DNA from: Botryllus schlosseri
Taxonomy: Eukaryota
Direction of reading: 5' to 3'
DNA length: 64,000 nt
NCBI GenBank assembly: GCA_051294905.1
Contig: CM119381.1
Location: 14,632,001-14,696,000, forward strand
Position numbers and translations under genes: made by a program. Each line of letters begins with the position of its first letter. Positions within the stretch are counted from its first letter, which is position 1. Shown here in pieces: positions 16,691 to 35,993 of the stretch. Under the pieces are notes generated by a model. The model was not told where the DNA came from and did no database searches. It saw only the letters and a program-made list of their open reading frames with translations.

Positions 16691-17037
16691 GACAGTGGTT
16701 GCAATCTGTGCCGTTTTAAATGACATTTTCCGTTTCTCTCAGGCTAAAAATTCGCCACGCTGCCAACGAGACGCCTGAAAAGCAGATTGTCTGATTGCGC
16801 CGAGCCACTTTCGACCCAACCGGAGAGAAAAGACTGCTAGCGGTCGAATATCGTTGGCATCCTGCTCTGTTCTTGTACCTGGTCATGAAAAAAACCAAGT
16901 AAATTATGCTCTCCGTGTCAGAGTTATTTTTTGCAATTTTCGTCATTTCAAAACGGTACGAGATTGCGATATAAGGAAAATGCGTTAGGCCTACTACAAT
17001 TACAAATTGATCGAGTTTGGGCTACAATAATGCAAAA

Positions 17038-17158
17038 GCTGCCTACGGCACACGGTATTCCCAGCCGGTCACCCATGCAAGTACTAACCGCGCCCAACGT
17101 TGCTTGACTTCCGAGATCAGACGAGATCGGGTATGTTCAACGTGGTATGGTCGTAGGC
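17038..17158 (-). rRNA. 5S rRNA #39 (flank A, U26)
   Basis: Array unit. Confidence 0.96.
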
Positions 17159-17503
17159 GACATTGGCTACAATCTGTGCCGTTTTAAATGACATTTTCCG
17201 TTTCTCTCAGGCGAAAAGTCGCCATGCTGCCAACGAGACGCCAAAAAGCAGATTGTCTGATTGCGCCGAGCCACTTTCGACCCAACCGGAGAGAAAAGAC
17301 TGCTAGCGGTCGAATATCGTTGGCATCCTGCTCTGTTCTTGTACCTGGTCATGAAAAAACCCAAGTAAATTATGCTCTCCGTGTCAGAGTTATTTTTTGC
17401 AATTTTCGTCATTTCAAAACGGTACGAGATTGCGATATAAGGAAAATGCGTTAGGCCTACTACAATTCCAAATTGACCGAGTTTGTGCGACAATAATGCA
17501 AAA

Positions 17504-17624
17504 GCTGCCTACGGCACACGGTATTCCCAGCCGGTCACCCATGCAAGTACTAACCGCGCCCAACGTTGCTTGACTTCCGAGATCAGACGAGATCGGGTAT
17601 GTTCAACGTGGTATGGTCGTAGGC
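17504..17624 (-). rRNA. 5S rRNA #40 (flank B, U26)
   Basis: Array unit. Confidence 0.96.
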
Positions 17625-17969
17625 GAACGATGTGACAATTTGTGCCCTTTTAAATGACGGCTTCCCTTTCTCTCGGGCGAAAAGTCGCCATGCTGCCAAC
17701 GAGACGCCAAAAAGCAGATTGTCTGATTGCGCCGAGCCACTTTCGACCCAACCGGAGAGAAAAGTCTGCTAGCGGTCGAATATCGTTGGCATCCTGCTCT
17801 GTTCTTGTACCTGGTCATGAAAAAAACCAAGTAAATTATGCTCTCCGTGTCAGAGTTATTTTTTGCAATTTTCGTCATTTCAAAACGGTACGAGATTGCG
17901 ATATAAGGAAAATGCGTTAGGCCTACTACAATTACAAATTGATCGAGTTTGGGCTACAATAATGCAAAA

Positions 17970-18090
17970 GCTGCCTACGGCACACGGTATTCCCAGCCGG
18001 TCACCCATGCAAGTACTAACCGCGCCCAACGTTGCTTGACTTCCGAGATCAGACGAGATCGGGTGTGTTCAACGTGGTATGGTCGTAGGC
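17970..18090 (-). rRNA. 5S rRNA #41 (flank D, C26)
   Basis: Array unit. Confidence 0.96.
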
Positions 18091-18332
18091 GACAGTGGTT
18101 GCAATCTGTGCCGTTTTAAATGACATTTTCCGTTTCTCTCAGGCTAAAAATTCGCCACGCTGCCAACGAGACGCCTGAAAAGCAGATTGTCTGATTGAGC
18201 CGAGCCACTTTCGACCCAACCGGAGAGAAACGTCTGCTAGCGGTCGAATATCATTGGCATTATCCTGCTTTTTTCTTGTATCTATGTACTACAATTACAA
18301 ATTGACCGAGTTTGTGCTACAATAATGCAAAA

Positions 18333-18453
18333 GCTGCCTACGGCACACGGTATTCCCAGCCGGTCACCCATGCAAGTACTAACCGCGCCCAACGTTGCTT
18401 GACTTCCGAGATCAGACGAGATCGGGTATGTTCAACGTGGTATGGTCGTAGGC
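18333..18453 (-). rRNA. 5S rRNA #42 (flank B, U26)
   Basis: Array unit. Confidence 0.96.
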
Positions 18454-18798
18454 GAACGATGTGACAATTTGTGCCCTTTTAAATGACGGCTTCCCTTTCT
18501 CTCGGGCGAAAAGTCGCCATGCTGCCAACGAGACGCCAAAAAGCAGATTGTCTGATTGCGCCGAGCCACTTTCGACCCAACCGGAGAGAAAAGTCTGCTA
18601 GCGGTCGAATATCGTTGGCATCCTGCTCTGTTCTTGTACCTGGTCATGAAAAAAACCAAGTAAATTATGCTCTCCGTGTCAGAGTTATTTTTTGCAATTT
18701 TCGTCATTTCAAAACGGTACGAGATTGCGATATAAGGAAAATGCGTTAGGCCTACTACAATTACAAATTGATCGAGTTTGGGCTACAATAATGCAAAA

Positions 18799-18919
18799 GC
18801 TGCCTACGGCACACGGTATTCCCAGCCGGTCACCCATGCAAGTACTAACCGCGCCCAACGTTGCTTGACTTCCGAGATCAGACGAGATCGGGTATGTTCA
18901 ACGTGGTATGGTCGTAGGC
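18799..18919 (-). rRNA. 5S rRNA #43 (flank A, U26)
   Basis: Array unit. Confidence 0.96.
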
Positions 18920-19264
18920 GACATTGGCTACAATCTGTGCCGTTTTAAATGACATTTTCCGTTTCTCTCAGGCGAAAAGTCGCCATGCTGCCAACGAGAC
19001 GCCAAAAAGCAGATTGTCTGATTGCGCCGAGCCACTTTCGACCCAACCGGAGAGAAAAGACTGCTAGCGGTCGAATATCGTTGGCATCCTGCTCTGTTCT
19101 TGTACCTGGTCATGAAAAAACCCAAGTAAATTATGCTCTCCGTGTCAGAGTTATTTTTTGCAATTTTCGTCATTTCAAAACGGTACGAGATTGCGATATA
19201 AGGAAAATGCGTTAGGCCTACTACAATTCCAAATTGACCGAGTTTGTGCGACAATAATGCAAAA

Positions 19265-19385
19265 GCTGCCTACGGCACACGGTATTCCCAGCCGGTCACC
19301 CATGCAAGTACTAACCGCGCCCAACGTTGCTTGACTTCCGAGATCAGACGAGATCGGGTATGTTCAACGTGGTATGGTCGTAGGC
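19265..19385 (-). rRNA. 5S rRNA #44 (flank B, U26)
   Basis: Array unit. Confidence 0.96.
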
Positions 19386-19730
19386 GAACGATGTGACAAT
19401 TTGTGCCCTTTTAAATGACGGCTTCCCTTTCTCTCGGGCGAAAAGTCGCCATGCTGCCAACGAGACGCCAAAAAGCAGATTGTCTGATTGCGCCGAGCCA
19501 CTTTCGACCCAACCGGAGAGAAAAGTCTGCTAGCGGTCGAATATCGTTGGCATCCTGCTCTGTTCTTGTACCTGGTCATGAAAAAAACCAAGTAAATTAT
19601 GCTCTCCGTGTCAGAGTTATTTTTTGCAATTTTCGTCATTTCAAAACGGTACGAGATTGCGATATAAGGAAAATGCGTTAGGCCTACTACAATTACAAAT
19701 TGATCGAGTTTGGGCTACAATAATGCAAAA

Positions 19731-19851
19731 GCTGCCTACGGCACACGGTATTCCCAGCCGGTCACCCATGCAAGTACTAACCGCGCCCAACGTTGCTTGA
19801 CTTCCGAGATCAGACGAGATCGGGTGTGTTCAACGTGGTATGGTCGTAGGC
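19731..19851 (-). rRNA. 5S rRNA #45 (flank D, C26)
   Basis: Array unit. Confidence 0.96.
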
Positions 19852-20093
19852 GACAGTGGTTGCAATCTGTGCCGTTTTAAATGACATTTTCCGTTTCTCT
19901 CAGGCTAAAAATTCGCCACGCTGCCAACGAGACGCCTGAAAAGCAGATTGTCTGATTGAGCCGAGCCACTTTCGACCCAACCGGAGAGAAACGTCTGCTA
20001 GCGGTCGAATATCATTGGCATTATCCTGCTTTTTTCTTGTATCTATGTACTACAATTACAAATTGACCGAGTTTGTGCTACAATAATGCAAAA

Positions 20094-20214
20094 GCTGCCT
20101 ACGGCACACGGTATTCCCAGCCGGTCACCCATGCAAGTACTAACCGCGCCCAACGTTGCTTGACTTCCGAGATCAGACGAGATCGGGTGTGTTCAACGTG
20201 GTATGGTCGTAGGC
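20094..20214 (-). rRNA. 5S rRNA #46 (flank C, C26)
   Basis: Array unit. Confidence 0.96.
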
Positions 20215-20561
20215 GACAGTGGTTGCAATCTGTGCCGTTTTAAATGACATTTTCCGTTTCTCTCAGGCTAAAAATTCGCCACGCTGCCAACGAGACGCCT
20301 GAAAAGCAGATTGTCTGATTGCGCCGAGCCACTTTCGACCCAACCGGAGAGAAAAGACTGCTAGCGGTCGAATATCGTTGGCATCCTGCTCTGTTCTTGT
20401 ACCTGGTCATGAAAAAACCCAAGTAAATTATGCTCTCCGTGTCAGAGTTATTTTTTGCAATTTTCGTCATTTCAAAACGGTACGAGATTGCGATATAAGG
20501 AAAATGCGTTAGGCCTACTACAATTACAAATTGATCGAGTTTGTGCTACAATAATGCAAAA

Positions 20562-20682
20562 GCTGCCTACGGCACACGGTATTCCCAGCCGGTCACCCAT
20601 GCAAGTACTAACCGCGCCCAACGTTGCTTGACTTCCGAGATCAGACGAGATCGGGTGTGTTCAACGTGGTATGGTCGTAGGC
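20562..20682 (-). rRNA. 5S rRNA #47 (flank C, C26)
   Basis: Last complete unit. Confidence 0.96.
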
Positions 20683-21030
20683 GACAGTGGTTGCAATCTG
20701 TGCCGTTTTAAATGACATTTTCCGTTTCTCTCAGGCTAAAAATTCGCCACGCTGCCAACGAGACGCCTGAAAAGCAGATTGTCTGATTGCGCCGAGCCAC
20801 TTTCGACCCAACCGGAGAGAAAAGACTGCTAGCGGTCGAATATCGTTGGCATCCTGCTCTGTTCTTGTACCTGGTCATGAAAAAAAACCAAGTAAATTAT
20901 GCTCTCCGTGTCAGAGTTATTTTTTGCAATTTTCGTCATTTCAAAACGGTACGAGATTGCGATATAAGGAAAATGCGTTAGGCCTACTACAATTACAAAT
21001 TGATCGAGTTTGTGCTACAATAATGCAAAA

Positions 21031-21076
21031 GCTGCCTACGGCACACGGTATTCCCAGCTGGTCACCCATGCAAGTA
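21031..21076 (-). pseudogene. 5'-truncated 5S rRNA pseudogene at the array boundary
   Basis: Only nt 76-121 and the terminator remain (gctgcctacggcacacggtattcccagctggtcacccatgcaagta, then unique sequence). Carries a private G93A change at 21059 and lacks the A box and 5' end. Confidence 0.92.
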
Positions 21077-23196
21077 TAGTTGTTTGTTTTTGCCATTATT
21101 ACGTCATACAGACAAAATAGTTCCTTCATTTCGAATTGACGTTCACTACTGATGAGAGTCAGTCGAAAAGCTTTTTGCGAATAAATTAGCAATGTGAAGT
21201 TATTGTTTCGCGTTATTCTGAAGTTCTGTACCCCAAATGGCTTGTTCAATTACTGTAATAATAAAAATGAATTCATTTTCATAGGTGATGCTCGGGTCGC
21301 GAAATGCCGCAAAAAATCAGATTTTGGTGGTAGGCTAAAAAGCTGCTTTGCCATTAAACTGTTATGAATTCTGAAGTTAGATGGAGCTAAAGAGCAGAAC
21401 ACACGGCATCGCGAGATCATTTGTTTTTCTCATTTACTCGCGAGACAAATGGGGAAATCGAAAAAAAAAACAGAACACGAGTTGGAGCAACGTATCATAA
21501 GGTAGCGAGTTCTAATGTGCCTACTTTCCTTGATCGTTCTGGATCTTATTTTCCAAGACATAAGGCAAAATTCTCAACACAAACCTGTGTGGGTTTCACC
21601 CTTTCGGCAGATAGAAAGCTAGACTCGGGCTATTGGACCGTGATGTTGAGGTGTGGCCGAAGGTGACCTTTTACTTGTCACCCCATCAGAACCGGAGGCA
21701 GAACAGGGACGTGAGGTAGTTGATGACCTTTTTCTGTTTCTATTTGTAGTCGTATTCTTGCCATGTCTTCGTTATCGATGATAATTTTATACCATGGCGA
21801 TATAACATATTTTTAAATAGTATATTCATATTGAAATGAACCCGAATATTTTCGGCTGACACTCGTCAGGGGTAATCGTCAGCAACTAGTAGAGAATTGG
21901 AAAGAACATTGTATATCAACAATCGTATCACAAAATATGACGTCACCAGCATGAAATTTCGAATGAGAGAGCGTTCAATGTACTATTTTTAGGTGGTACA
22001 CGACATATTTTGATTCCTGAGATGCCAACTTATAGCACGGACCACTTTTTGTAAGATACTGCTTTTGCAGATCCGAGGACGAGTAGGAGCCAATATAAAC
22101 CTCCAACACCTAGGAAGGCATTCCCACCATCGAGAAATGTATAGGCCTACTCATTTGGATGTGAGGTTCACGCTTACAAATTAGAATTGCCGACATAGCC
22201 ATTCACATTGCGATTGCTAGGTAGCGTGCCAGCATTGCAGGTAAAATGTAGGCTCTGGGCGCAACGTAATGTTGTAGGCGACAAATTTGAGAATTGAGAA
22301 GTAATGTTGATCAAATTATATCAGTTAACAAATTTCACTGGTCCTGAGGTTTATCATCCCGGTTTGTTGGAACTGCAATTGAACAGCAGCTGGCTGCCAG
22401 TAAGACTCTTGACCGAGGTATTGCTATCCCCACAGAAGCTATTACACGATCGGCATGGAAACGCGTTTGGCTTCCAAGTATAGACAGTTAGACACCTCTA
22501 TACGCGTCTGTATTTGTTAGTGACGATCGCGATTGGACTCTTCCATGCGACGGTTAATTACATCGACAACGAGGTAGTGGGCAGACTTTGTTGTCAAGCC
22601 AATCTTATGAAATTAACCTCGGCCTGAAGTTTGAACGAGATCTCAGCAGGCAAGTTATGTGGCAACAGAGGTAATGGTTGATAATTCAAAACCTCACACG
22701 GATTGAGAGAAAGTCCTTATTCCTGTCTGCAATAAAATTGTAAAAAAAATGAAGAATTGAAACGATCCCCATGTCAAATTATACTATTCGTAGACGTATT
22801 TGTGAAATGTCCGGAGAGATAAAAGAAAACTTAATTTCTTCTTTGAAGCAGCGAAAAGCCTACTTGAGTACGCCGAAAAGGCAGAAGTACTTCGTCAGTG
22901 ACCGGTGACCACCTATATAAGACTGTGGTTGCTGCTATACGCATTCTGGTAGTTTGCTTTTGCCGTAAGCCAAAAGAGTTCAGAACCACTGTGCTAGTGT
23001 GCCGCGAACTCTTTCATTTTCAAAGTGTGCCGGTTGGGAACCACTGTTGTAAGGTCTGTATTGCACAGGAGGGGTATTCAGAGATCGGTGAATAGCAGAA
23101 CCGAGACAGTTACAGGTTCGCATACTTGACACAGTACTGATACCCTGTCCCACGTTTTACCACGATTTCGTGAAAAAGGTTTAATGAATAACGCAA

Positions 23197-26100
23197 TCAA
23201 ACGAGAGACACATCATTCCGATAATTTAGAAGATCAAGCTGAGGGAAAATCTCCTTCAAAACAGAATCCAACATGTTGTATAAGAGTTGCCTATTCAATC
23301 CGCCGTCCTGAAGCGATCTCACGAGACGAGACACGCCGGTCTCAAACGAGGCGCTGCCGACAAGATAGCGCAACCCCACGGGCAACGCGTTTCTCAGGCA
23401 TTCCTCAACGCTCATTGTGATTTCGCGCTTTTTTTCATCACTCAAACGAGACCAAGTGTCTCTTTCGTCATTACCGTCACGCCACTCCCCTTTGGGCCAC
23501 AGTGATTCAATTAATATGGTCAGGTATTTCGTCCAAGCCTCGTCCGAGGTCAGTTCCGCTATCTCCGCGGACAAATACGATTGCACATATCGTTTTAGGG
23601 ACAACGACGTCAAGCATATTTGACCGCCAGCCAGGTCCCAGTTGTGGCGGACCAATTTCAGCAGCAGTTCGGCCGATAGCTCGTAAGGTTCTCTGGCGGG
23701 GCGTTCGGAGTCTTTCGAGTCGCAACCGTCTCCATAACCTCGTTGCGGAAGTCTGCCTTCGAATTTGTGTTCTGAATTTCCGGTGCAGTGCAGGTCGATG
23801 TCTGCTTCTGTCTTCCACGCGAATTTGAAGAGGTCTTGACGTGGCTGCATTGAAGGCATTTTATTTCGTGTGGCTATCATACTTTTGACGAGATGGATAA
23901 TGAAAATTCACAACTACAAAACAGCAAGGGGTATCGTATATACATCTAACATAACAAAATTATTGCACATCAGCACATGTATTTAGTAATGAGTAGGGCA
24001 ATTTTTTTTGACATGTAAAAAAAGTCAAAATTGAAGCATTAGGTCAAAAGCTGTCAAAATTGTTGACAAAGTTAAAAAACTTTTTTGCAACCTGCATTTT
24101 GTTTGTATCGTAGATTTTGCACTGTCGGTGAACTTATCATTTGACATTTTACAGCTTGTAGCCTACTTTATAGGCCTACCGTTGTAGACGGCCCTTTGTC
24201 TACTCATTGTGAATCATAAACATTCCAATGAAACAAATAGGTTGACATGGTGTTATGCTAGGGTTACCATATTTTGGTGAAGCAAATTCCGGACACTCTT
24301 TAGCGCCCACTAGCGGACTTTAAAATGAGGTGTAACACATTGTCCGTCAATATGACGTCACACTAGCAAAGCATCGCCAATCGACTGTGATACACTATAC
24401 AGGAATGGAGTGGAACATAGGTCACGAATTGGGCCATCTGTAATGTGAGCTCTGGTGATTGCTACTTGCTACAGTCTGCAATAGATTCTTCCACGGGCTG
24501 AATGAAATCGTCAGCGGGCCGTGTCTGGTCTGGCAGGATTGTAATTGAAAGCCCTGCTAAACTGTTAGGTCGGTGCGGCTACTGGTTATGTGTTTTAATC
24601 AGGTCCAAAACAACATTTTTTCTGCCCCCTTCCGCCCAAAAGAGCACTGATCTTGGGCCCATCATAGGGTAGTCGATGTAACCAGTTGTGCACTTATATG
24701 CATTTGGCTGTTAAATTTTATGTATGAATTCTGTCAATAATATTGATTCTTTCGTATATTAGGCTACTATAAAATGCACCAGCAGGTTACACATCCGGTG
24801 ATTTCCAACCTTTCATGGTCGCGACCTCATTTCGCACTTGAAAATGTTCCTTGGCAAAAGCTCAAAACTTGATAAGCTGATTACTAAAAAAAATTTAGCT
24901 TGCCCAAACTTACTCATGGCCTAGGAATCTGATTACGTCTAAAGCAGTGGTTCCCAACGTGGGCGGCCTAGGAGGCGAAAATGACGAAGGGTGCGATGGG
25001 GGGGGGGGGCGAAAATAGCGAAGGAGGCGGTGGGGGGGCAATGACGCGTTAAAACGGCTATATAGGAGTCAAGTCGAAGAAATGACCCTTTTTTTTAGTC
25101 AACCCACGGAAATTTAGTTGCAGAAGTGTAAAATTCGACATCGAGCCGAAAAGTTTACTAATATCATTATACGTTGCATTAAGTCGCGCACGACGCAAAG
25201 AAGAGTTTTGAATTGCGTAAATCTGCTTGAAAATATTATTGTTTATGTTAATTTACGAATAACTTTTGAGCCTGTTTTAAGCCTTCAAAATTCCGGACAT
25301 TTTGGCATATTTTAGAAATTCCTCCCGGACGCATATTTTTCAGGGAAATTCCGGACGTATGGCAACCCTATGTTATGCGCGACGTACCGCAATATCCCAA
25401 CTGAAGCAAGACTGCATGGGGATTGCATGGTTCTTATATCAAGAACCGCATGATGAAAAATTGTGCTGTAGACACCATTGCCAGAATGAAGCAAGACGGT
25501 ATGTCACCGGCAGTGTACGCACAACTTCGCTGTTGTCGGCCAACAACTGCTGCTGTTCAACGCTCTCTCTCCATTATTGGTAAGCTACTTAGTAAGGACA
25601 GACACTTCTACCCGACAATGTAGGGAAGTATCTTTCGTTGTACTACAAATTTTTTAAATTATTTCCATCATAATGGGTAATGTAACTACTGGAATTCTTC
25701 ATAGGGCCAGATGTCGTTAAAACAAAACTTTTTCATGTAAGAATTTGTCAGTTTCTGAGGCAAAAGAGTTTTTTTTTTGCCAAACTACTTCGTAAGGGCA
25801 GACAGTTCCAATCAGAAATAAAGATAAGTATTACAATTCTAGCATTATGTGGGAAAACACCTAATTTGCATACCTTAGGTCAAATTTGGTCAAAATTAAG
25901 AATTTTAAGGGAAAAAAATGTCAAAATTTTGATTTTCAAGTCAAAATCTTTCGTTTTTAGGTTAAAAAAATCGCCCTAATCATGAGACAACATTTTCAAA
26001 ATTGCCACACAGTTAGAGCAATACTTAGCAGACTGGTGTTCTACGGGGTCCTGAATTGGAAAAATAAATTCTTTTAGAGAGATGACATAAAAATGGAGGT

Positions 26101-29100
26101 TCGACAACTGCATTGTAATTCTGATTGACAGACATGCCTAGGAGTCAGTCAATATCAAGATGAATCTCGTACAAATGTGTAAATATAGACGTCAATTTTT
26201 AAGGGTCCGTCAAATAGTTTGGGAGCTGCATTGCCCAGCGTCAGTCATTTACCAAGAGCGTCTAATGCACTTTGAACATGAGCCCCTTAGATGTGCGGTC
26301 CGTGACCTTTTCTGCATAATTTGCCCCTATTGCTTTTAGATTTAAGCTCAAGGAGGAGGTCCAGGAATTTTTTACCATCATCAATAGGGCATTGTTTCAA
26401 ATTTTTACCATCACCAATGGGGCATTGTTTCAAAAAGTTTGAGAACCACAGCCCTAGAGAGCAGAATTTATCACAAACTACTCTAGCGAAGTGTTTGTTT
26501 TCAAGCACTACTTACTTCGAATCCCGCAAATTGCCGAGACGTGCTCGCTATCATATGCTGCTTCCCAGTTTCCAATTGTTTCACAGTACCGAAAACTTTA
26601 TTCCTCAATTTCGTGACAGCCCCCACGTTTCCGATTTCCGTTGAAGACAGAGGCGGGTTAGGTACATTTTGATCACCTTCTTTACTCTGTCACAAGTACA
26701 TATATAAAGTATTCTAGTAATGAGAGACTCGCGATGCATCCATGTCACTTACTGCAGTCGCCTCTGTTTGTACTGTTGCATACTCCTCTGGCAAGACGTC
26801 ACTGGTAAATTTCATAGAAGTGCTTCCTAGCAAGTCAAGTATGGCAGACTTGAACAGTTTGTCAAACCTAAATTTTTTCAACGAAAATTCAACAGTGGAA
26901 TGAACACTGAACAGTAAAAGTCCGTATACGTGCTGCCATCAAGCGATAGTGAAGGTATTTAATAAGGTTAGGTCAAAAATTGAAATTTCGAGGGCACATC
27001 ATACCAAATCGATTTCGAATCGAGCATGCAGGGGACATTCTTAATCACATTCAGGGCTGGTATAGTATGAGAGGAATACACAAAGACGGATGGATTCCGC
27101 TAGCTAAGCCTTACCAGCAGTAGGCAGACATTTGATTCAACTGGAAAATATGCAAATAAGCTCCTTCGATATGAAATTACTTTCGATAGTAAAACGACTA
27201 CAACTCAATAATAAATTAACATTATTGTAACATAGCTTATACGTGACTGACGTCCTTTCCCTTATCACTTTTAACCTATGTGCATGTGTTGAGCTTGAGA
27301 TGGTTAGTTTCCACCATGGCACACATATGAATGATATCATATTGAAAACTACCAGAATACCCAATGGAGCTAACACAAGTAGATGCTGTAGAAAAGTGTC
27401 CAACGATTGATCATACCTTGGCATCGATTCCGGTTTTCTCACATACGCAATCCTCGGGTCCGTCTCGTACGCCAAAAATTCACCCAGTTCCTTCGTCCGG
27501 CTGATGTATGGAATCGCTGATATCTGGTCAATTCAGATGCACTATAGCATTTACTACACCACAAGATTTGATTACATTGCTACCTCTCTGAGATAGGCTT
27601 GCAAGAATTTCTTCCTCTGTTCAATGTACTCGGTGTCCATGTTTCCAAAAGGCACAGGAAACATCCGAGACGGGCCTCTGATGTTCGCTATCAAAGTTTT
27701 CGCCACAGCGTTTTGCGACAATCTCTCTTGTAATGCTAGAAACTCCCTGAAACGCCTTTGCACCTGATATCGAAGAAGAATAGTGTCAGGGATTTACATA
27801 TGGACATTGCTGACTTACCCTACCATCTATTATGAAGCTGTTGCAATGTTATTATTCCAGCTTAATATCTGCAATACCACACTCGCCAATTGTGTATGTA
27901 TCTATCTTTTACGCACTGTTTCATGCTCCCAGTTGCTTTATGCTGAATTGTTGCTACGGCCAATGGGGATCTGTTTATTCTGATGTTATTCCTAAATACG
28001 ACATTGTTCATCATAATTTGCCATTTGATTTTACAATTCAACTGTTATATTGTGCTGTTTACTCTAGTTAACTCGAGGTGATAAACTTTAGCATAAATGT
28101 AGTTTTGAAAGAAGATCATTTAAACTTTGTGTTGATACAGGACAAATCGAAGGAAAAAATTGCACTGTACTACATATGAACAAGATGCAACACCTTCATG
28201 AAAGCAAAGTTTTGTGGAATATGTGAGACATCATAGTGGTCTACTTCATAGCAAACTCAACGATAGATGTAAATAGCCTAAAAATGAATTTGAGAAAATA
28301 CCATATGCTTTTTGTTGAATACGCCACTGTTCCGTACATCGCCTTCAGAAGGCACATCATCAACTTGGGATTGTTCTTTGGTGATGTAAGTGATTTTGTA
28401 CAAAGCATACTTCTTATTCGAGTCATACGCTTCCGAAGTAATGACGACATCGACAAGACGAATGCGATGGAAGAACTTTTGCGGCTTCTCACTGGAAAAG
28501 TGTTTGATCAAGTTTAATTTCAATTTCAGCTGTAAAGGTAAGGATATTGTTTTTCTGCGTGGCAGCAGACTGTGTTATTACCATGGCCACAGTAATTTCC
28601 GGATCCGTACCATGCTTACCATTAAAAAGTCTATTGCATTGAATTATAACTCCATACTTTAGATGGCCTATTATTATCATCAGAAGTAGAGTAGTACCGG
28701 AACTTCAATTTATTTGAAGTACTCAGTGAATTTTTGGCTACTTTCACTTGTACTTCAACATTTCTCAAGGTCAAACTGCCTTCTTTCGGTCTCAAACTTT
28801 ATCAAGTAAAAATTACAATTTGGGTAGGTTCATATCCCTTTTACGCGTCAAATGACCATGAAAACCAGCCGATGCAGGGCCTGCATGACTATAATTCCAA
28901 TAACGTTGTTCATCGCCATTAGTCATTCTGCATCAGTCGCAAAAGATGCATCTTGCCATTTGAAGAACTGTCACTGCTGAAAGTATAACCTAAACGCCTC
29001 ACCCAATCCACTTACTCAGTACTATCCAGGACTTCCGACCTTTCTACTTGAGTGTCAGCAATGACTACTTTGACCACAGCCTGAAGGATACCATAATTAC

Positions 29101-30961
29101 TGCGACTAATGACCTTAAAACTTAGCCTAGCCCAGGTATTAGTCAAGCAGTCAGTATTCGTTACCAATCAGGATAAACTACTCGAGAATAGATGAGCTAC
29201 AAAGAAACAAGACCAGCTGAAACGTATCAAGAAGGAGAATTTTACGTAAGGCACTAGCAGACAAAATGTCGTGAACAGCATTGAACCTTACGAACTTGAT
29301 TGAAGATCTTGATTCATCTGACCTACTGGGAATATACCACCATAATAGTAATAGCAAACCTTTTACTTTCCGCAGCAACGTGCGGAATATTATTGTCGGG
29401 CACCAGATGGTCATCGCATTCAGGCGCAAAATGCATTTCAGTGGACAGAAGCGGTAACGGAATGTCTCCTTCGATACTTTGAAATTGGTCACAATTTTCA
29501 TCACCGTTGCTGCATATAGTAGATACGGATTCCGAAAAGCTGGAGGCTGGCTTTCGTAAATCACAGCCATCGGCACTGTCTCTTTTAAGCAGAGGCACAT
29601 TGGTGTCAACATTGTTTTCAGGGAGAGGTAAAACTGTTTCCTCGGAACATAATGACGAAATTGGAACTGATTCTTCCGTATTGCCCTTGTCGTCATTGGT
29701 AATATCATCAACCTTACGATCAATGTCTACGCCGGACCAATCTCCATCGGCTGAATTTTCCATTTGATTGTCTCTGACAACATCATCCGATAAGATCTCT
29801 TTCACAAGTTCCAAGACATATAAAGGATCGGACATCATGTCAACAAGGCTGAATAGCACATTTTGCACAATCAGTTCTCTGACTATGTATAAAGGACTGC
29901 CCGAGACTTTGTAATCCGTAGGTAAAACTTCCTTGAGTAGCAGCAAAGCAACGCCACGCAGGTACTCCATTTCCGAAGTGGGGAAAGCTGACATGACTGG
30001 GTGAATTGCATTTTCCTCGCTGTATGCCACGGCTATATGATGAGTCTTGCTATCGTATTCTTTCCTGCATATATCAAGTAATTCAATCATGAAATAATAA
30101 GGCATGTAATACTATGCTAGGATCAGTGATCACAACGCACGACAACACCAAGATTAACCACCTAAATCGAGTACGCAAATAACAACGATAAAACTTCGCT
30201 GAACAGGAAGCATCCAAACACCAACATGAATAATAGCAAAAAACTAAGGTGTAGACAGATATAACAATATTAAAGCGTTCAGATTACCGTAAGTACACAT
30301 GCTGACAATCGCACAATAGGTAGACAATGTGATTCTGTCTTTAAATACTTTCTCACAATGAAAAATGTTAACGTTAGATCTTACCTATTCAAAAACTTGG
30401 ATTCCGTTTTTGCCGTCGCTTGATTGTAAGCAACAAGATGCTTTGTAAACACAATCAATATTGAATTCAGCAACTTTTCTCTATCGACACTGCTGATTTT
30501 TCGCCGGGAATGGACAAAAATATGCTCAAAGACTTCGAAGGCATCTTGAACGAATGTCACGTCGTCCGTAACAGTTTTGTACCACGACAGAATAAAGTCT
30601 TGAATGATATGTTCTGGAAGAGGCGCAATCTTCTATTATGAGTAAAATTAAGAAAATAGGAGTCCTTACTTGATAATTCTCGGAGCTTTTTGGTGATTTG
30701 ATCATCATGTTCAGGTAATCGGTCTTGTGTGTCAATATTTTTCACGTGTTGCAATGGATGGACATAATGAAATAACAAATCGGAAGGAAAGGCAGAATTT
30801 GTCAACAGCAAGAAATACAAAAAAGAAAGCAGAACGAAGCAAGACAAGAGCAGTTTCAAAATAGGCAAAGATCCACAAAAAGACCACAAAATGACAGTGA
30901 GGATTGAGATAAGGCTCATAATCTTGAGGCTGTTCATCTTCCAAACCGTTCTATTGCTCAT
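23197..30961 (-). CDS. SNX19: Sorting nexin 19-like (TM hairpin - PXA - PX - Nexin_C, no RGS domain seen), multi-exon
   Basis: Exon 30961/30937-30670: hydrophobic N-terminus. 30613-30385: HIIQDFILSWY (PXA). 30064-~29360: EMEYLRGVALLLLKEVLP...RELIVQNVL...MSDP (PXA). 28491-28302 and 27763-27584: VQRRFREFLALQERL...IRGPSRMFPVPFGNMD (SNX19-type PX). 27523-27417: ISAIPYISRTKELGEFLAYETDPRIAYVRKP. Last exon ~23880-23197: LQDGGLNRQLLYNMLDSVLKEIFPQL (Nexin_C). Several middle exons are not resolved. Confidence 0.88.
23994..25978 (+). mobile_element. Non-autonomous hAT derivative in an SNX19 intron, interrupted by a nested element
   Basis: TIRs tagggcaatttttttt / aaaaaaatcgcccta; decayed 8-bp TSD gtaatgag/atcatgag; internal hAT dimerisation-domain remnant PTTAAVQRSLSIIGKLLSKDRHF (25423-25623); collinear with 53251-54126. 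Confidence 0.85.
24259..25370. mobile_element. Nested hAT-type element (TAGGGTTACCATA TIR family)
   Basis: TIRs tagggttaccata / tatggcaacccta; perfect 8-bp TSD tgttatgc (24251-24258, 25371-25378). Removing it restores continuity with the 53.2-kb copy of the host element. Confidence 0.9.
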
Positions 30962-32788
30962 ACAGCATCAGATCATATTCCTCATCGGTGACAGATGTAT
31001 CAGGAAGGCAATGCAAGGCTTTTCCGATGTGAATTGCGAGAAGGTGTTTGCACTAAAATGGCACAACAAAAACAATTGCGGACACGTTTTCGAGTTGATA
31101 AATTGACAGCATGTTGCGATCAGTTGATAGGAGTTGATCGCTTCAGAAATAAGCGCATCATTAACAGACCTTCACATTTACACCTCGGTTCAACAATGAC
31201 AAGCAGCCAAGTGAAACCTGACATTTAGATGTATAATTTTTACATTCCACCATCGGCACTCAATATGATTCATTCATTAGGCACATTCTCGACTAGTGAT
31301 GATTAGGGCAAGTTTTTGTTGCAGTTAAATTGTGGTAAGTTGCATTTATTTTTGACAAAAGTTACAGTAAAAAGTTACATTTAATTTTTCACAAAAGTTG
31401 CACTAAATGACCACATTTTGATCGGTTGAATAAAAAAAAAAAGGTCAACTTTCCAGCTCAGAAATACCCGTAAGAGCGTTGCTTCAGTGCTGATTTACGG
31501 TATTTCAGTCGAATTTGGACATGTATTTCACCAAAAACAAAAATACTTTCATGAAAAATCGAAAAAGTTGCAAAAAGTTGCACTATAAGATTCCTTCAAA
31601 CAGCTTAAAACAATATTCTACATAGTATCTTACGAGTATTTCGGAAGCTGCCGGAAGCTGTAAAAAAAGTTGCAAAAACTTGCCCTAGTAATAATCATTT
31701 GACTGATTCCAAATGTCATTATCATAAAAATATCAACTCGAAACTGAGCTGACCCATACAAGGACCATTGTCGGTGCAAGCGTGCAACTAATAAATCCAA
31801 ACAGAGTTTGAAGTAGAGTAAAAGTAGCTTATAAATAACTCGCAAATGACAGATTTTTCACTACTGAGTCTGTCAGCTAGCTATTGGAACATGCCTATGG
31901 TACTGAAAATGAGGAGAGTGCTGTCTTGCAGCAGTTTCAAGTTGTCATGCATTAGTCATGAGAACGCAAGTCATCAAACTAGAAGCAGCCAAAGAGAGGC
32001 AGAAAGTGGAATTTTGGAAGTTAATTCCAAAACATTTCTCAATCTTTGCTCTATCATACCACTGTAAATTCTGATTCCAAACATGATATTCACTGAATCT
32101 GAAACTGATAACACTCATCTGAGAGCCACTACTAACCAAAATGTATTCACATACATAGTGACCATTAATAGTATAGGAACGTGTGTAAAAACTAGCCTTA
32201 TTCAGCAAATTCCGATGAGCAAGTCAACAACAGGTTGTGCAGTTAACATACCTCATTTCACACCAATAAAACAAGCACCATATGGTAATGCAAACACACT
32301 CACCATTATAAGTTCACATCTCCTCAACACTCCGAAAGTAAAAGAACGACAAGGGCAGAAACTCAAAGTAGAAGGGCAATGATACGATCTACCAGCGCTT
32401 CCAGAGACCTTGTTGCAAAACTGAGTTACTAAATATCAAACAAAGGTTGAAGTGGCACTCTGCTTACTTTGTAAAGATATCGACCATTCAAAGTAACGCA
32501 GCATGTAATGGAACCTTGATCGATGAGATTGAAGGCAGATAGGAGCGTGTCACCGAAAACACAATGCAGTCTAAAAATATTGATACATAATCCATGTAAT
32601 AGATAAATCGCTAGAACAGTCTACTTACAATGACATCAACTCACTGCTCACTGGAAAAGAAAAAGACAAGGCTAAAAGTTTCCGGATATACCATTGATTA
32701 TTTTCATTTTACCAAGTTTATTCTCTTTTCCTTCCTCTTCCACGAGACGAAAAAGCCGCTCTACAGTTTCATCCAACAACGGCCTCAT
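30951..32788 (-). CDS. ZSWIM7: Zinc finger SWIM domain protein 7 / SWS1, 135 aa, five exons (not in the ORF track)
   Basis: Exons 32788-32713, 32650-32629, 32570-32468, 32408-32304 and 31052-30951 all have GT-AG boundaries, are phase-compatible and total 408 nt. Translation: MRPLLDETVERLFRLVEEEGKENKLVSSELMSLLHCVFGDTLLSAFNLIDQGSITCCVTLNGRYLYKVSGSAGRSYHCPSTLSFCPCRSFTFGVLRRCELIMCKHLLAIHIGKALHCLPDTSVTDEEYDLMLYEQ. The SWIM CxC...CxH motif and overall layout match the recalled human ZSWIM7. Confidence 0.9.
31304..31687. mobile_element. hAT-like MITE in ZSWIM7 intron 4
   Basis: TIRs tagggcaagttttt / aaaaacttgcccta; decayed 8-bp TSD gtgatgat/gtaataat. Confidence 0.7.
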
Positions 32789-33278
32789 AGACGCTAATAT
32801 CCAATATCAGTTATGAGCATCCAAGTTCTATGGATCTGCTAAGCATGTTACTAAAAATAAATATATAATTTTACAAAATATATAAATATGATATAAAAGC
32901 ATCCTACTACGACACTGACATTGGGGCAGGTATTACAACAATCAAACTGCATATGAAATCTGAAGGACAGAACACTAATCGAAATTGATAGCACCGATGA
33001 AAATTTCAGAATTAATTTCGAAAGTAACAGAAAATATGCACCAAATCATAATGATCGTCGCTATGAAAATATCTACAACTACTGATGTAAATACTAAACC
33101 AATTGCGGAACCACGGAGACGGAGTGATTAATATTAAATATGAATTAGATATATATGCAACAGGCACCATTGCAACTGATGACTCTTATTGGATGACACT
33201 GTTGCATATGAAGAAAAATCATTGCAATATATAATAACAGGTAAAGCTTATAAGCAGTCCGAACACTCATCAGCATTG

Positions 33279-35993
33279 TCAGTCCAGGCATGGCAGAAGA
33301 GATTTCCATTTCTTCGATTCTTTGCCATCTTTTCGCAGCGATAACCAAAAGTCATCGTCCAAGTCGATTGCATTTTCTGACTCTGCCACAGAGTACGTTC
33401 TACTGGACGGCCTGTGATAACGATTATCGGATCCTGCACTAGAGACATGCGCAGTACACAGCAGTTTGGTCACTTCGACAATTCGTTTCACAGGCTGCAG
33501 TGATGGAATCACGTGTCTTGCACTTTCTAATAGGCCGTGATTTTGTGAAGATAGAAATTCGATCAATACAGTTACATCGTATTGAAACTGCAATCCGCCT
33601 TGAACACTGAATTTTGTACGAAGAGTAGCTATGTATTTCAATATCGCTTGGAAAACAGCGGAAACAACCGGAACAATCCCGGCGAGCTGAAACTGCGCGT
33701 CCATACCAGTAAGCGCCTTACAAACACTAGTCATTAAATCGTTGATTTCCTTCACATATACATTCTTAACTTCCGTGTCGATGGAACTTTTTTGCATCCA
33801 CACCTTCTGCGGCGGAAAATATCGCTCCAAAACCTCGGTGCATGCCTTACTGGCGATTTCAGACATTCTGCTCATTGTGGTCGTACTCGTGATTTGCATT
33901 CGGGTTATCAAAGTGTCGATGTCGCGCAGGTACTTTGTGGTTAAAATGAGAGTGGCGGAATTTTGATCCCGGCGTTTTTCTATCTCGTTGTGACACGCCT
34001 CGACGATTTTCAGGCTCTCTATCGCGACATTGGTCAGTATGCGCAAGTCGGTCAACGCAAAAGTCAAAACTGGAGGCAGGTCTTTCGCGGAGCTCGAATG
34101 CTCAATTTTCGAATCAACAAATTGATAACCGCACGTCAAAATGGACAGTATGGAAGGGATCCCGGTTTTAGACGTGACATCAAGGTTCGGATACGACTCG
34201 ACAATATGAAGTAAAGGTTGCAGCGCACTTACGCATAAAGAAGTACTCACAGAAAGTCGGTCGTTGACATCTAACGAATGTTGAAGGGCTGGTTTATCGA
34301 AATGTGGCGTCATACTTCCCAACATTTCACACGCGATACCATCCGAGCAGGACAACGCGGCGTTCGCAACAACGTGACTCGCCGCTGTTGTGATTGAGTT
34401 GTGCATCTGGATACTCAAGATATCGAGGCATTTCAAGTTGACAACGGCGGCTTGCATCACAATCAGATCCACGTCTGAGGCGAGGAAGCCTGCTTTGTGA
34501 TAATCGGCGCAACGGTTAGGGAGAGATGCAATGACAGAGTCCAAGTGTTTTGACGTAACCGATTTTATCGCTTCACTGTTTGAAGAATCCTTCCACGACA
34601 CCGATTTAAATTCCACGCTATGAGCCAAGGAAGATGATGCTCTGCTACTAGCACTGGCAACGGACATTGCATCATCAGTCGGACCCGTTTCAGAAAAATT
34701 TTGCAATATTTTTGTTTTTCCTCCCAGTCCATCTAAGAAATTATGTAGAACGCGTTTCTGGGAGTCAAACAATTCAATAACTGACTGACAATAGTCTGTA
34801 GACTGTGAGATAATGGTGTCTGGAATCGTAATATTTGCTACTCTCTTAATAACCTTATGAAAAGACATGTGACCTTTCGATTGCATTGGCCTTATCTCGA
34901 TTTTCGATGCCAGGTTCCAAGTGTGGCCTTGCTTAATTACATCCAACTGCGACGCTCCTGATTGCGAAGCAGCGTATCCGTCCACGAATGATACTTCAAG
35001 AACTTTCATGACAACACACGCCAAGTCTTTCACACTGTACTTCGAAAGGGAATCAAGCACGACATTCAGAGCGATTGGAGATATGTCCGAGACGTGAGGA
35101 ACGCATTCATCCAGGAATCGGCTTCTTTCTGAAAGGTTTTTCCACTGGGTTATCACCGACTGTCCAGTATTTGACTCTGTTAATCTGGTGACGTACATTT
35201 TCTCTAACGGTCTCTTAAATTCTAATTGTTTAACATGCTCCGAAGAAAATTTGTTGTAGATTTCAATGAGTTTACAAAACCTCTTGTTTTCGGCGGTGTG
35301 AAATATATCAGAGTGATTGATTTGAGCTTTGGTGTAAAGGTGTGTCAACAGTCCAATGTTCTCGAGTCTCGATAATATCAGCCACTTCACGTACAATAGC
35401 GTTTTACCTCTCCACATATGGCATTGCTGCCGTAGATGGTCTAATTTGTGTATAGTTGAGTTACTGCTTTCCAGAAGGTTGATTGTGGTTTCATTGCATG
35501 CCTTCATGCACGAAGTCAACTCGGCATAGACTTTTCCCAGCTTTGGTAATTTTATTGCGGTTGTCAAATCATCTAAATTCAAATCATCTCGGCAGTGCTC
35601 ATAGTATTGAGCAGTTTTCTTGAACTTTTTCTCGCTGTTCAGTGCGTTGGTAACCTTGAATATGAAAGTTTTCAAAGAAGTAACAGCGTCTCTCAAATTT
35701 TTCATTTGATCCAACTCTCTACTCATCCGCTGATACATGAGTGTTGCGTTCAACACATCTATGTTTGGAGCTTCCGATACATTGGCAATTAGGCTATCAC
35801 CAGATTCTGGTTCATGAGGCAGTTGAAACTGAGAAGCGTTCAACGATTTGCGTCGAGTCAATGTTGTCCACTCATTCGTAACTGCACTGCTACCCACATT
35901 GACATTCCGCCGTTCAATAGTGGATTCCGATATTGCCTGGAAAAATTCTTGCCAGCTTTCAGACGGTGCATCGTATTGGACACTGGAACCCAT
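33279..35993 (-). CDS. CCDC142: Coiled-coil domain-containing protein 142-like, single exon, 904 aa
   Basis: Uninterrupted 2715-nt ORF. The C-terminal FPPQKVW...KFSVQGGLQFQYDV...LLC...FWLSLRK resembles the recalled CCDC142 C-terminal domain (PPRRYW...RFSLQGALQLKQDF). Confidence 0.75.
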   Translation of the reverse strand: MGSSVQYDAPSESWQEFFQAISESTIERRNVNVGSSAVTNEWTTLTRRKSLNASQFQLPHEPESGDSLIANVSEAPNIDVLNATLMYQRMSRELDQMKNLRDAVTSLKTFIFKVTNALNSEKKFKKTAQYYEHCRDDLNLDDLTTAIKLPKLGKVYAELTSCMKACNETTINLLESSNSTIHKLDHLRQQCHMWRGKTLLYVKWLILSRLENIGLLTHLYTKAQINHSDIFHTAENKRFCKLIEIYNKFSSEHVKQLEFKRPLEKMYVTRLTESNTGQSVITQWKNLSERSRFLDECVPHVSDISPIALNVVLDSLSKYSVKDLACVVMKVLEVSFVDGYAASQSGASQLDVIKQGHTWNLASKIEIRPMQSKGHMSFHKVIKRVANITIPDTIISQSTDYCQSVIELFDSQKRVLHNFLDGLGGKTKILQNFSETGPTDDAMSVASASSRASSSLAHSVEFKSVSWKDSSNSEAIKSVTSKHLDSVIASLPNRCADYHKAGFLASDVDLIVMQAAVVNLKCLDILSIQMHNSITTAASHVVANAALSCSDGIACEMLGSMTPHFDKPALQHSLDVNDRLSVSTSLCVSALQPLLHIVESYPNLDVTSKTGIPSILSILTCGYQFVDSKIEHSSSAKDLPPVLTFALTDLRILTNVAIESLKIVEACHNEIEKRRDQNSATLILTTKYLRDIDTLITRMQITSTTTMSRMSEIASKACTEVLERYFPPQKVWMQKSSIDTEVKNVYVKEINDLMTSVCKALTGMDAQFQLAGIVPVVSAVFQAILKYIATLRTKFSVQGGLQFQYDVTVLIEFLSSQNHGLLESARHVIPSLQPVKRIVEVTKLLCTAHVSSAGSDNRYHRPSSRTYSVAESENAIDLDDDFWLSLRKDGKESKKWKSLLPCLD

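What the first reader, a model, noticed from the sequence alone, without database searches (positions are those of the whole stretch)
30917..31054. ZSWIM7 stop codon interleaved with the SNX19 start codons: candidate zero-spacer dicistronic unit
Seen: the last ZSWIM7 exon (acceptor cattttag at 31053) ends with TAG at 30953-30951. The SNX19 frame opens with ATGs at 30961 (overlapping the ZSWIM7 CDS by 11 nt), 30937 (13 nt after the stop, directly preceded by AG) and 30919. The SNX19 TM hairpin and PXA domain follow immediately, so there is no room for a 3' UTR plus promoter, and I saw no AATAAA just downstream. Known: tunicate operons are resolved by SL trans-splicing, and Ciona operon genes can abut. 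Inference: a meiotic/HR factor (SWS1) and an ER-endosome tether share one pre-mRNA. Either the ZSWIM7 cis-acceptor at 31053 doubles as the SNX19 trans-splice acceptor, or the TAG stop or GGAAG|ATG serves as the acceptor, making the two mRNAs mutually exclusive.
Basis: partly seen in the sequence, partly recalled or inferred. Interest (0 to 1): 0.8.

Follow-up and report, generated by a model that had tools for sequence, protein, structure and literature searches.

The report
Conserved sea-squirt ZSWIM7–SNX19 two-gene transcript
Two unrelated genes, the DNA-repair factor ZSWIM7 and the membrane-tether SNX19, sit 13 bases apart on one strand and appear on the same spliced RNA, a pairing kept across sea squirts; this is an unusually tight example of the known tunicate operon, and how the second gene gets its own messenger is still unshown.

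Summary
On the minus strand the last ZSWIM7 exon (31052-30951, acceptor AG 31054-31053) ends in TAG at 30953-30951. The SNX19 frame has ATGs at 30961, 30937 and 30919.

Both gene identities are confirmed. RNA contigs from two studies run spliced from ZSWIM7 exons straight into SNX19 exons.

ZSWIM7 followed by SNX19 on the same strand recurs in seven other tunicate sources:
- Ciona intestinalis and Clavelina lepadiformis genomes: 97 and 95 nt between stop and start, with a strong acceptor 6-8 nt before the ATG.
- Five RNA contigs: spacers of 13, 14, 19, 29 and 37 nt.

N-terminal alignment makes ATG 30937 the orthologous start. The "interleaved" ATG at 30961 is a by-product of the ZSWIM7 LYEQ codons.

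So this is a conserved operon-type unit, compacted here to a 13-nt spacer.

Not shown: spliced-leader addition, its site, or the ZSWIM7 poly(A) site. The two raw RNA runs had no reads on these exons. Contig depths in one run, and two relatives with no AG in the spacer, mildly favour an SNX19 5' end upstream of the stop (the 31053 acceptor, or a start in intron 4) over a junction acceptor.

Verdict: a new, very compact member of a known kind. The scan noted other ultra-short spacers in this genome.

The parts
32713..32788 (-). ZSWIM7 exon 1 (CDS from ATG 32788)
   Evidence: RNA joint 32650->32713. The spliced CDS of 408 nt gives a 135-aa protein.
32629..32650 (-). ZSWIM7 exon 2 (22 nt)
   Evidence: RNA joints 32570->32629 and 32650->32713.
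32468..32570 (-). ZSWIM7 exon 3
   Evidence: RNA joint 32406->32466, 'cut +2', which gives a GT..AG intron 32467-32409.
32304..32408 (-). ZSWIM7 exon 4 (CxC half of the SWIM finger)
   Evidence: RNA joints; alignment with named ZSWIM7 proteins.
31053..32303 (-). ZSWIM7 intron 4, 1251 nt (the other ZSWIM7 introns are 58-62 nt); acceptor AG at 31054-31053
   Evidence: Joint 31052->32304 in X1 (depth 34.9) and X4 (depth 14.9). The acceptor has a T-rich run.
31290..31700 (.). Interspersed repeat inside intron 4
   Evidence: 4289 first-look candidates in the genome; scored copies are 78-87% identical. Very deep in RNA contigs.
31198..31235 (-). Possible internal RNA start: upstream end of the X4 contig at 31198, with a TATA-like TTATACAT at 31235-31229
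   Evidence: X4 record 10 covers 31027-31198 at depth 7.87. X4 has no coverage at 31199-31269 or 31805-32232. Sequence. Weak: one run only.
30951..31052 (-). ZSWIM7 exon 5 (CKH... half of the SWIM finger, ends LYEQ-stop); TAG at 30953-30951
   Evidence: The whole protein is 72% identical to P0025, 50% to Styela clava ZSWIM7-like and 34% to a primate ZSWIM7.
30938..30950 (-). 13-nt spacer aacggtttggaag between the ZSWIM7 stop and the orthologous SNX19 ATG; AG at 30939-30938
30959..30961 (-). Upstream in-frame ATG overlapping the ZSWIM7 CDS (probably incidental)
   Evidence: It is made by the Tyr-Glu codons of LYEQ. The same ATG is in L012, but the 8 codons after it are not conserved (SNRTVWK against NSNAMSN).
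30670..30937 (-). SNX19 exon 1 from the orthologous start ATG 30937: N-terminal membrane hairpin
   Evidence: N-terminal alignment with 5 orthologues: an aromatic residue at position 18-19 from the Met. Joint 30613->30670.
30385..30613 (-). SNX19 exon 2 (start of the PXA domain)
   Evidence: Pfam PXA E 2.2e-13, profile positions 14-86; RNA contig.
29362..30066 (-). SNX19 exon 3 (rest of PXA plus a variable linker)
   Evidence: Pfam PXA E 3e-10; used as query.
23197..23880 (-). ORF holding the last SNX19 coding exon (Nexin_C)
   Evidence: Pfam Nexin_C E 7e-12. PX lies at 27572-27763, E 1e-8.
33280..34499 (-). 3' part of the upstream CCDC142 gene (stop TGA 33282-33280)
   Evidence: Pfam CCDC142 E 4e-18. 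Raw reads cover its 3' UTR down to about 32875.

Best explanation
ZSWIM7 and SNX19 form one conserved tunicate transcription unit (an operon-type pair). In this genome the gap between the two coding regions has shrunk to 13 nt.

Shown:
- RNA runs continuously from spliced ZSWIM7 exons 3-4-5 into spliced SNX19 exons.
- The same gene order, strand and abutment occur in eight tunicate sources.
- The SNX19 start that matches the orthologues is ATG 30937.

Inferred, and the reading I commit to: most SNX19 messengers take their 5' end upstream of the ZSWIM7 stop. That end would come from spliced-leader addition at the strong exon-5 acceptor (31053), probably fed by transcripts that begin inside the unusually long intron 4. 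ZSWIM7's last coding exon would then double as the SNX19 leader. ZSWIM7 itself would be translated from RNA that runs on into SNX19. A given RNA molecule would then serve one gene or the other.

The confidence given (0.45) is for this whole statement, including the inferred 5'-end mechanism. The operon-type unit alone I put at about 0.8-0.85.
For: Co-transcription:
- X1 contig of 2983 nt (depth 34.9) joins ZSWIM7 exon 3, exon 4, exon 5 plus SNX19 exon 1 (31052-30670 unbroken), exon 2, and about 2.2 kb more.
- X4 (another study): a contig at 30731-31001 bridges the stop and the start.

Conservation:
- Ciona intestinalis genome, 97 nt.
- Clavelina genome, 95 nt.
- RNA contigs L012 13 nt, L005 14 nt, L011 19 nt, L007 29 nt, L010 37 nt, all di- or tricistronic and spliced.

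5' end upstream of the stop:
- X4 depths: exon 4-5 junction contig 14.9; intron-4-into-exon-5 contig 7.87; exon 5 13.5 + 14.5 = 28; junction plus SNX19 exon 1 contig 22.7. So exon 5 sits in RNAs that lack exon 4, and SNX19 exon 1 is not deeper than exon 5.
- The intron-derived contig stops at 31198 with no coverage further up the intron.
- Intron 4 is 1251 nt against 58-62 nt for the other ZSWIM7 introns.
- The 31053 acceptor is the only one here with a T-rich run. Junction AGs score 0.39-0.48 pyrimidine.
- The closest relative L012 and L005 have no AG at all in their 13-14 nt spacers.
- Trans-splicing at cis acceptors, and the intron-promoter idea, are described for Ciona (PMC11155486).
Against: - No spliced-leader-bearing read, cap site or poly(A) end was seen. 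Contig tips are clipped, and the two raw runs had zero reads on these exons.
- Contig depths are means over short contigs and come from one run.
- The intron-4 contig could be partial intron retention.
- An exon-5 leader would carry four upstream ATGs.
- Ciona and Clavelina use a clear junction acceptor, so the ancestral mechanism is the junction type.
- This genome does have an AG directly before ATG 30937, and an AATAGA hexamer 12 nt upstream of it.
- A contig across two genes does not prove a single molecule.
Confidence: 0.45

Rival explanations
1. Classical Ciona-type abutting junction. The AG at 30939-30938 is the spliced-leader acceptor, so the SNX19 mRNA is leader plus ATG. ZSWIM7 mRNA is polyadenylated at the same G, with a 13-nt 3' UTR. 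The junction-spanning RNA is only the unresolved precursor.
For: - In Ciona operons poly(A) is added at the G of the trans-splice AG, and most lack AATAAA (PMC1488885).
- Ciona and Clavelina have strong acceptors 6-8 nt before the SNX19 ATG.
- L007 and L011 have an AG 2 nt before the ATG, and this window has one 0 nt before it.
- AATAGA overlaps the stop 12 nt upstream of the AG here, and lies 15-25 nt upstream in L011 and L007.
Against: - No pyrimidine tract: 0.39 against 0.52-0.87 at proven acceptors.
- L012 (same 13-nt spacer) and L005 have no AG in the spacer.
- In X4, SNX19 exon 1 is not deeper than exon 5.
- An AG within 2 nt of the ATG in 2 of about 5 lineages is not beyond chance.
Confidence: 0.28
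2. Two overlapping but independently transcribed genes. SNX19 has its own capped, leader-less start in ZSWIM7 intron 4 or exon 5. ZSWIM7 transcripts simply end inside SNX19. The dicistronic contigs come from assembly joining overlapping RNAs.
For: - The X4 contig 31027-31198 ends in intron 4 with nothing further upstream. A TATA-like element sits about 37 nt before that end.
- X1 shows about 3-fold more depth on the SNX19 contig than on ZSWIM7 exons 1-2.
- The tool warns that a contig across two genes shows no single transcript.
Against: - Abutment is conserved over eight sources, including Ciona, whose intron 4 is only 83 nt and cannot hold a promoter.
- Ciona and Clavelina have operon-type junction acceptors.
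- About half of Ciona genes, and all 19 operon downstream genes that could be checked there, are trans-spliced (PMC1488885).
Confidence: 0.12
3. A true bicistronic mRNA. SNX19 is translated from the dicistronic RNA by termination-reinitiation across the 13-nt spacer, with no trans-splicing needed.
For: - The spacer is 13, 13 and 14 nt in three stolidobranch-like sources, two of them with no AG.
- ATG 30937 has A at -3. The relatives have a purine at -3 and G at +4.
- Dicistronic contigs appear in every RNA assembly seen.
- Reinitiation-based bicistronic expression exists in yeast (PMC11952965; abstract only).
Against: - Reinitiation after a 135-codon ORF is normally very inefficient.
- X1 depth suggests many SNX19 RNAs lack the ZSWIM7 5' exons.
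- No translation data.
Confidence: 0.07
4. Assembly error or chance juxtaposition with no biological meaning.
For: None found.
Against: Independent RNA contigs from two studies cover the junction. The same junction occurs in seven other sources.
Confidence: 0.01

Closest known systems
Ciona operons without intercistronic DNA (Satou 2006 PMC1488885; Satou 2008 PMC2760879)
   Same: Same-strand unrelated genes, less than 100 nt apart, no AATAAA, dicistronic RNA detectable. The Ciona intestinalis orthologous pair itself fits the operational definition: 97 nt, with an acceptor 8 nt before the ATG.
   Different: In Ciona the two UTRs abut, and coding regions are still separated by normal UTR lengths. 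Here only 13 nt separate stop and start, the junction AG has no pyrimidine tract, and two relatives have no junction AG at all. Leader addition was not shown here.
C. elegans SL1-type operons, and hybrid operons with internal promoters (as discussed in PMC1488885; internal promoters from my own knowledge)
   Same: No intercistronic spacer, so upstream 3'-end formation and downstream trans-splicing are mutually exclusive. A downstream gene may also have its own start inside the operon.
   Different: A different phylum and a different leader system. The nematode cases keep AATAAA and ordinary UTRs.
Trans-splicing at a cis-splice acceptor with a promoter in the preceding intron (Ciona TS-1stAS genes, PMC11155486)
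   Same: A strong cis acceptor doubles as the leader acceptor, and an intron-internal promoter has been proposed.
   Different: In Ciona it is the gene's own first intron. Here it would be the last intron of the upstream gene, so a coding exon of one gene becomes the leader of the next.
Botryllus fuhc-sec / fuhc-tm linked transcripts (PMC3691228)
   Same: An ascidian gene pair with spliced RNAs that link both genes, and no leader found on the downstream mRNA.
   Different: 227-nt spacer, a polymorphic locus, and the authors favour read-through. Here the spacer is 13 nt and the pair is conserved across tunicates.

Membership tests
Tunicate SL-resolved operon (Ciona type) | Neighbouring genes on the same strand with less than 100 nt between them | tested here: met
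   13 nt from the stop to the orthologous ATG.
Tunicate SL-resolved operon (Ciona type) | RNA that spans both cistrons | tested here: met
   X1 contig of 2983 nt and X4 contig 30731-31001 bridge the junction with more than 31 nt on each side. Caveat: these are contigs, not single molecules.
Tunicate SL-resolved operon (Ciona type) | Downstream gene carries the spliced leader | tested here: inconclusive
   No leader seen. Contig tips are clipped and the raw runs X26 and X27 had no reads on the exons. The species' leader was not identified: the Ciona leader has no exact copy here, and matches with up to 3 mismatches are under twice the control count.
Tunicate SL-resolved operon (Ciona type) | Upstream poly(A) site coincides with the trans-splice AG | not tested
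   No 3'-end reads were obtained.
Tunicate SL-resolved operon (Ciona type) | Upstream gene lacks AATAAA near its end | tested here: met
   No AATAAA or ATTAAA between 31100 and 30300; only AATAGA over the stop.
ZSWIM7 / SWS1 | About 135-145 aa, with sequence homology to named ZSWIM7 proteins | tested here: met
   Profile search names Styela, Ciona and vertebrate ZSWIM7. The window protein is 50% identical to Styela and 34% to a primate, E 1e-28.
ZSWIM7 / SWS1 | SWIM zinc finger CxC...CxH | tested here: inconclusive
   The motif C-P-C ... C-K-H is present. Pfam SWIM is below its cut-off on this protein and on tunicate orthologues: E 0.43 and 0.019.
SNX19-type sorting nexin | PXA, PX and Nexin_C domains in that order | tested here: met
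   Pfam hits on exons. The orthologues carry the same three domains.
SNX19-type sorting nexin | No RGS domain (which separates it from SNX13/14/25) | tested here: inconclusive
   No RGS is listed for the full-length orthologues P0002, P0006 and P0010. Not every exon of the window gene was scanned.

The most novel reading that the evidence does not exclude
In one ascidian lineage (this genome, its relative L012 and the Styela-like L005) the ancestral junction acceptor of the ZSWIM7-SNX19 operon, still present in Ciona and Clavelina, has been lost. The spacer is fixed at 13-14 nt. SNX19 is therefore expressed in one of two ways. Either the leader is trans-spliced inside the coding region of the upstream gene, at the exon-5 acceptor, so each transcript is an either/or choice between a recombination-repair factor and an ER-endosome tether. 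Or SNX19 is translated by termination-reinitiation on a stable bicistronic mRNA. Either would be a mode of operon use not described for chordates.
Probability: 0.3. Interest if true: 0.7.

Novelty: new member of a known kind. Interest (0 to 1): 0.45.

Why it matters
Tunicate operons without intercistronic DNA raise a question left open since 2006: how can one transcript give both an upstream poly(A) end and a downstream trans-spliced 5' end?

This pair is a clean natural series for that question. The same two genes occur with 97, 95, 37, 29, 19, 14, 13 and 13 nt between them, with and without a junction AG. Simple 5'- and 3'-end mapping in a few species would show whether resolution moves into the upstream coding exon, or is dropped, as the spacer collapses.

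It also warns annotators. The Clavelina annotation already misses the first SNX19 exon.

Tried and rejected
- **Raw reads.** Runs X26 and X27 gave no reads on ZSWIM7 or SNX19 exons, only on the intron repeat and the CCDC142 3' UTR. No 5' or 3' ends could be mapped.
- **Ciona leader.** It has no exact copy in this genome. With 3 mismatches there is only a modest excess over control (1162 against 667) and no clear family. I did not identify the species' leader. No leader-like string occurs in the fetched RNA contigs. L012 starts and L005 ends with a Nextera adapter.
- **Pfam SWIM.** Below cut-off on a 41-aa piece and on orthologue pieces. The PDB sequence search found nothing. Identity was settled by profile search instead.
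- **Spliced proteins.** The 135-aa spliced window protein was not typed into any database tool. It was compared only inside the sandbox.
- **Irrelevant or empty look-ups.** P0019/L008, P0013/L009 and P0092/L014 are not tunicate SNX19/ZSWIM7 contexts. P0001 had no DNA. Styela clava P0022 is not on record.
- **Literature.** The Oikopleura paper PMC507004 is not held.
- **ATG 30961 as the real start.** Rejected by the orthologue alignment.
- **A fusion protein.** Rejected, because the two frames differ and a stop intervenes.
- **A start at ATG 30919.** This Met is not conserved in L012.
Full report
**1. The observation**

Read on the minus strand, the window shows the following.
- A splice acceptor (...gccattttAG, AG at 31054-31053).
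- A 102-nt exon reading CKHLLAIHIGK...DLMLYEQ.
- A TAG stop at 30953-30951.
- A second frame that opens at ATG 30961, so it overlaps the first CDS by 11 nt. It has further in-frame ATGs at 30937 and 30919.
- An in-frame TGA at 30970-30968, which makes 30961 the earliest possible start.

No AATAAA or ATTAAA lies on this strand between 31100 and 30300. The only variant hexamers are AATAGA at 30955-30950, which overlaps the stop codon, and at 30637.

**2. Gene identities**

RNA joints define a five-exon upstream gene:
- exon 1: 32788-32713
- exon 2: 32650-32629
- exon 3: 32570-32468
- exon 4: 32408-32304
- exon 5: 31052-30951

It encodes 135 aa.

Pfam's SWIM model stays below its cut-off on this small protein. 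A profile built from tunicate orthologue pieces retrieves proteins named "zinc finger SWIM domain-containing protein 7" from Styela clava, Ciona intestinalis and many vertebrates. The spliced window protein aligns over its full length:
- 72% identity to P0025
- 50% to Styela clava ZSWIM7-like
- 39% to the Ciona protein
- 34% to a primate ZSWIM7 (E 1e-28)

The downstream gene carries these domains:
- PXA from the first residue of exon 2 (E 2e-13), continuing in exon 3 (E 3e-10)
- PX (E 1e-8)
- Nexin_C (E 7e-12)

Its full-length orthologues have the same three domains and no RGS on record. That is the SNX19 architecture. The gene upstream of ZSWIM7 is CCDC142 (E 4e-18).

**3. RNA evidence**

Only one read-laying run was allowed.

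The two raw RNA-seq runs (X26, X27) had no reads on ZSWIM7 or SNX19 exons. No 5' ends, leader junctions or poly(A) ends could be mapped.

Two contig sets from different studies are clearly RNA-derived: five introns are removed and intron depth is zero.

In X1, one 2983-nt contig (mean depth 34.9) runs in order through:
- ZSWIM7 exon 3
- exon 4
- exon 5 and SNX19 exon 1 as one unbroken block (31052-30670)
- SNX19 exon 2
- about 2.2 kb of further SNX19 sequence

ZSWIM7 exons 1-2 lie on a separate contig of depth 11.5.

In X4, depths were:

| Contig | Depth |
|---|---|
| 30731-31001, bridging the stop and the start | 22.7 |
| Two allelic contigs over exon 5 | 13.5 + 14.5 = 28 |
| Exon 4-5 spliced contig | 14.9 |
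| 31027-31198, running from intron 4 into exon 5 | 7.87 |

X4 has no coverage at 31199-31269 or at 31805-32232.

Three things follow from this.
- RNA covering the junction is present at a depth similar to the flanking exons.
- Exon 5 occurs in RNAs that lack exon 4.
- In X4, SNX19 exon 1 is not deeper than exon 5.

Limits: contig depths are means, contigs drop rare variants and short tips (so a 16-nt leader would be lost), and a contig across two genes does not prove one molecule.

**4. Comparative evidence**

A full HMMER search with SNX19 exon 3, a word-index search with an orthologue's ZSWIM7 piece and the profile search gave protein ids. Their contigs were then fetched.

In every tunicate source, ZSWIM7 lies directly upstream of SNX19 on the same strand (junction table):

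| Source | Type | Stop-to-ATG spacer | AG in spacer / acceptor |
|---|---|---|---|
| This window | genome | 13 nt | AG ends directly before the ATG |
| L012 (ZSWIM7 72% identical to ours) | RNA contig | 13 nt, stop TAA | no AG in the spacer |
| L005 (75% identical to Styela clava ZSWIM7) | RNA contig | 14 nt | no AG in the spacer |
| L011 | RNA contig | 19 nt | AG 2 nt before the ATG |
| L007 | RNA contig | 29 nt | AG 2 nt before the ATG |
| L010 | RNA contig | 37 nt | nearest AG 28 nt before the ATG |
| Clavelina lepadiformis GCA_961645235.1 | genome | 95 nt | strong acceptor ...ctttgttttAG 6 nt before the ATG |
| Ciona intestinalis type B GCA_018327825 | genome | 97 nt | strong acceptor ...tttttgttgcAG 8 nt before the ATG |

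Further points:
- All five fetched RNA contigs are spliced and carry both cistrons.
- The Clavelina annotation starts SNX19 too far downstream and misses this exon.
- In Ciona and Clavelina a POLE2-type gene lies convergent downstream.
- In Ciona the gene upstream of ZSWIM7 is Sec10 on the other strand. The conserved core is therefore the ZSWIM7-SNX19 pair, not the four-gene cluster noted for this window.

**5. Which ATG**

I aligned the SNX19 N-termini. The orthologues' first Met lines up with Met-30937, with an aromatic residue at position 18-19 in all six sequences.

The relative L012 also has the upstream overlapping ATG. That ATG is made by the Tyr-Glu codons of the conserved ZSWIM7 C-terminus LYEQ. 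The eight codons after it differ completely between the two species (SNRTVWK against NSNAMSN).

So the "interleaving" is incidental. The meaningful geometry is stop, 13 nt, start. ATG 30937 has A at -3.

**6. How it works**

Established background for Ciona:
- About a fifth of genes lie in operons whose members abut with no intercistronic DNA.
- The leader acceptor's G is also the upstream poly(A) site.
- AATAAA is usually missing.
- The two mRNAs may be mutually exclusive products of one transcript (PMC1488885; PMC2760879).

The Ciona and Clavelina versions of this pair look exactly like that.

For this genome I consider the operon-type unit well supported, at about 0.8-0.85. The open part is where the SNX19 5' end is made.

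For a junction acceptor at AG 30939-30938:
- the ancestral state is a junction acceptor;
- the AG sits directly before the ATG;
- the stop-embedded AATAGA lies 12 nt upstream of it.

Against it:
- there is no pyrimidine tract (0.39);
- there is no AG at all in the equally short spacers of L012 and L005;
- the X4 depths do not show extra SNX19 RNA starting at the junction.

For a 5' end upstream of the stop:
- the strong 31053 acceptor;
- the X4 surplus of exon 5 over exon 4;
- the intron-derived contig that ends at 31198, about 37 nt downstream of a TATA-like TTATACAT;
- an intron 4 of 1251 nt in a gene whose other introns are 58-62 nt.

I therefore lean, at modest confidence (0.45), to the reading in which exon 5 is both the ZSWIM7 coding end and the SNX19 leader. 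The Ciona-type junction comes next (0.28). Leader-less independent transcription (0.12) and a translated bicistronic mRNA (0.07) remain possible.

**7. Novelty and verdict**

Tunicate operons are well known, and the Ciona orthologous pair meets the published operational definition. This is a new member of a known kind.

Two things make it a useful case rather than a routine one:
- the extreme compaction to 13 nt between coding regions;
- the graded series across tunicates, including relatives with no junction AG.

Earlier unchecked notes of this scan mention other pairs in the same genome with 3-nt and 9-nt spacers. The phenomenon may therefore be general in this species.

Earlier notes call it a sea squirt with spliced-leader genes. 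The protein identities fit an ascidian distant from Ciona and nearer to Styela.

Noticed in passing
window 31290-31700: An interspersed repeat of about 400 bp sits inside ZSWIM7 intron 4. It has 4289 first-look candidates genome-wide, with scored copies 78-87% identical. It is very deeply represented in RNA contigs (depth in the thousands).
   Followed up: partly
window 32836-32875: Raw reads over the CCDC142 3' UTR (stop at 33282-33280) fade out near 32875. That is just upstream of a strong acceptor ...tatttttAG at 32852-32851 and of the 5' end of the ZSWIM7 contig (32836). It looks like a second, Ciona-type operon junction. In that run CCDC142 was covered while ZSWIM7 and SNX19 had no reads.
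   Followed up: partly
window 13459-21400: A large tandem array with 363-nt and 466-468-nt units, 95-98% matching, begins about 1.8 kb downstream of the SNX19 stop (23197).
   Followed up: partly
L013 9086-9660 (Clavelina lepadiformis GCA_961645235.1): The public annotation starts SNX19 at 9654. The exon encoding the conserved N-terminal hairpin begins at ATG 9181, 95 nt after the ZSWIM7 stop.
   Followed up: yes
L010 1-435: This RNA contig carries 435 nt upstream of the ZSWIM7 ATG, including a called 66-aa ORF. It may be an upstream cistron's end or an unprocessed outron.
   Followed up: no
G000, several places on C1 (e.g. 5594611, 5595927, 10511859): AGTCGATTTGAATAAGGC, a recurrent near-match to the Ciona leader, appears several times. 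It may be related to this species' leader genes.
   Followed up: no
L014 (Logan DRR046818 contig): A ZSWIM7-like 141-aa gene sits in a very compact, apparently intron-poor contig among kinase and Arf genes. SNX19 is not next to it. The organism is unknown.
   Followed up: no
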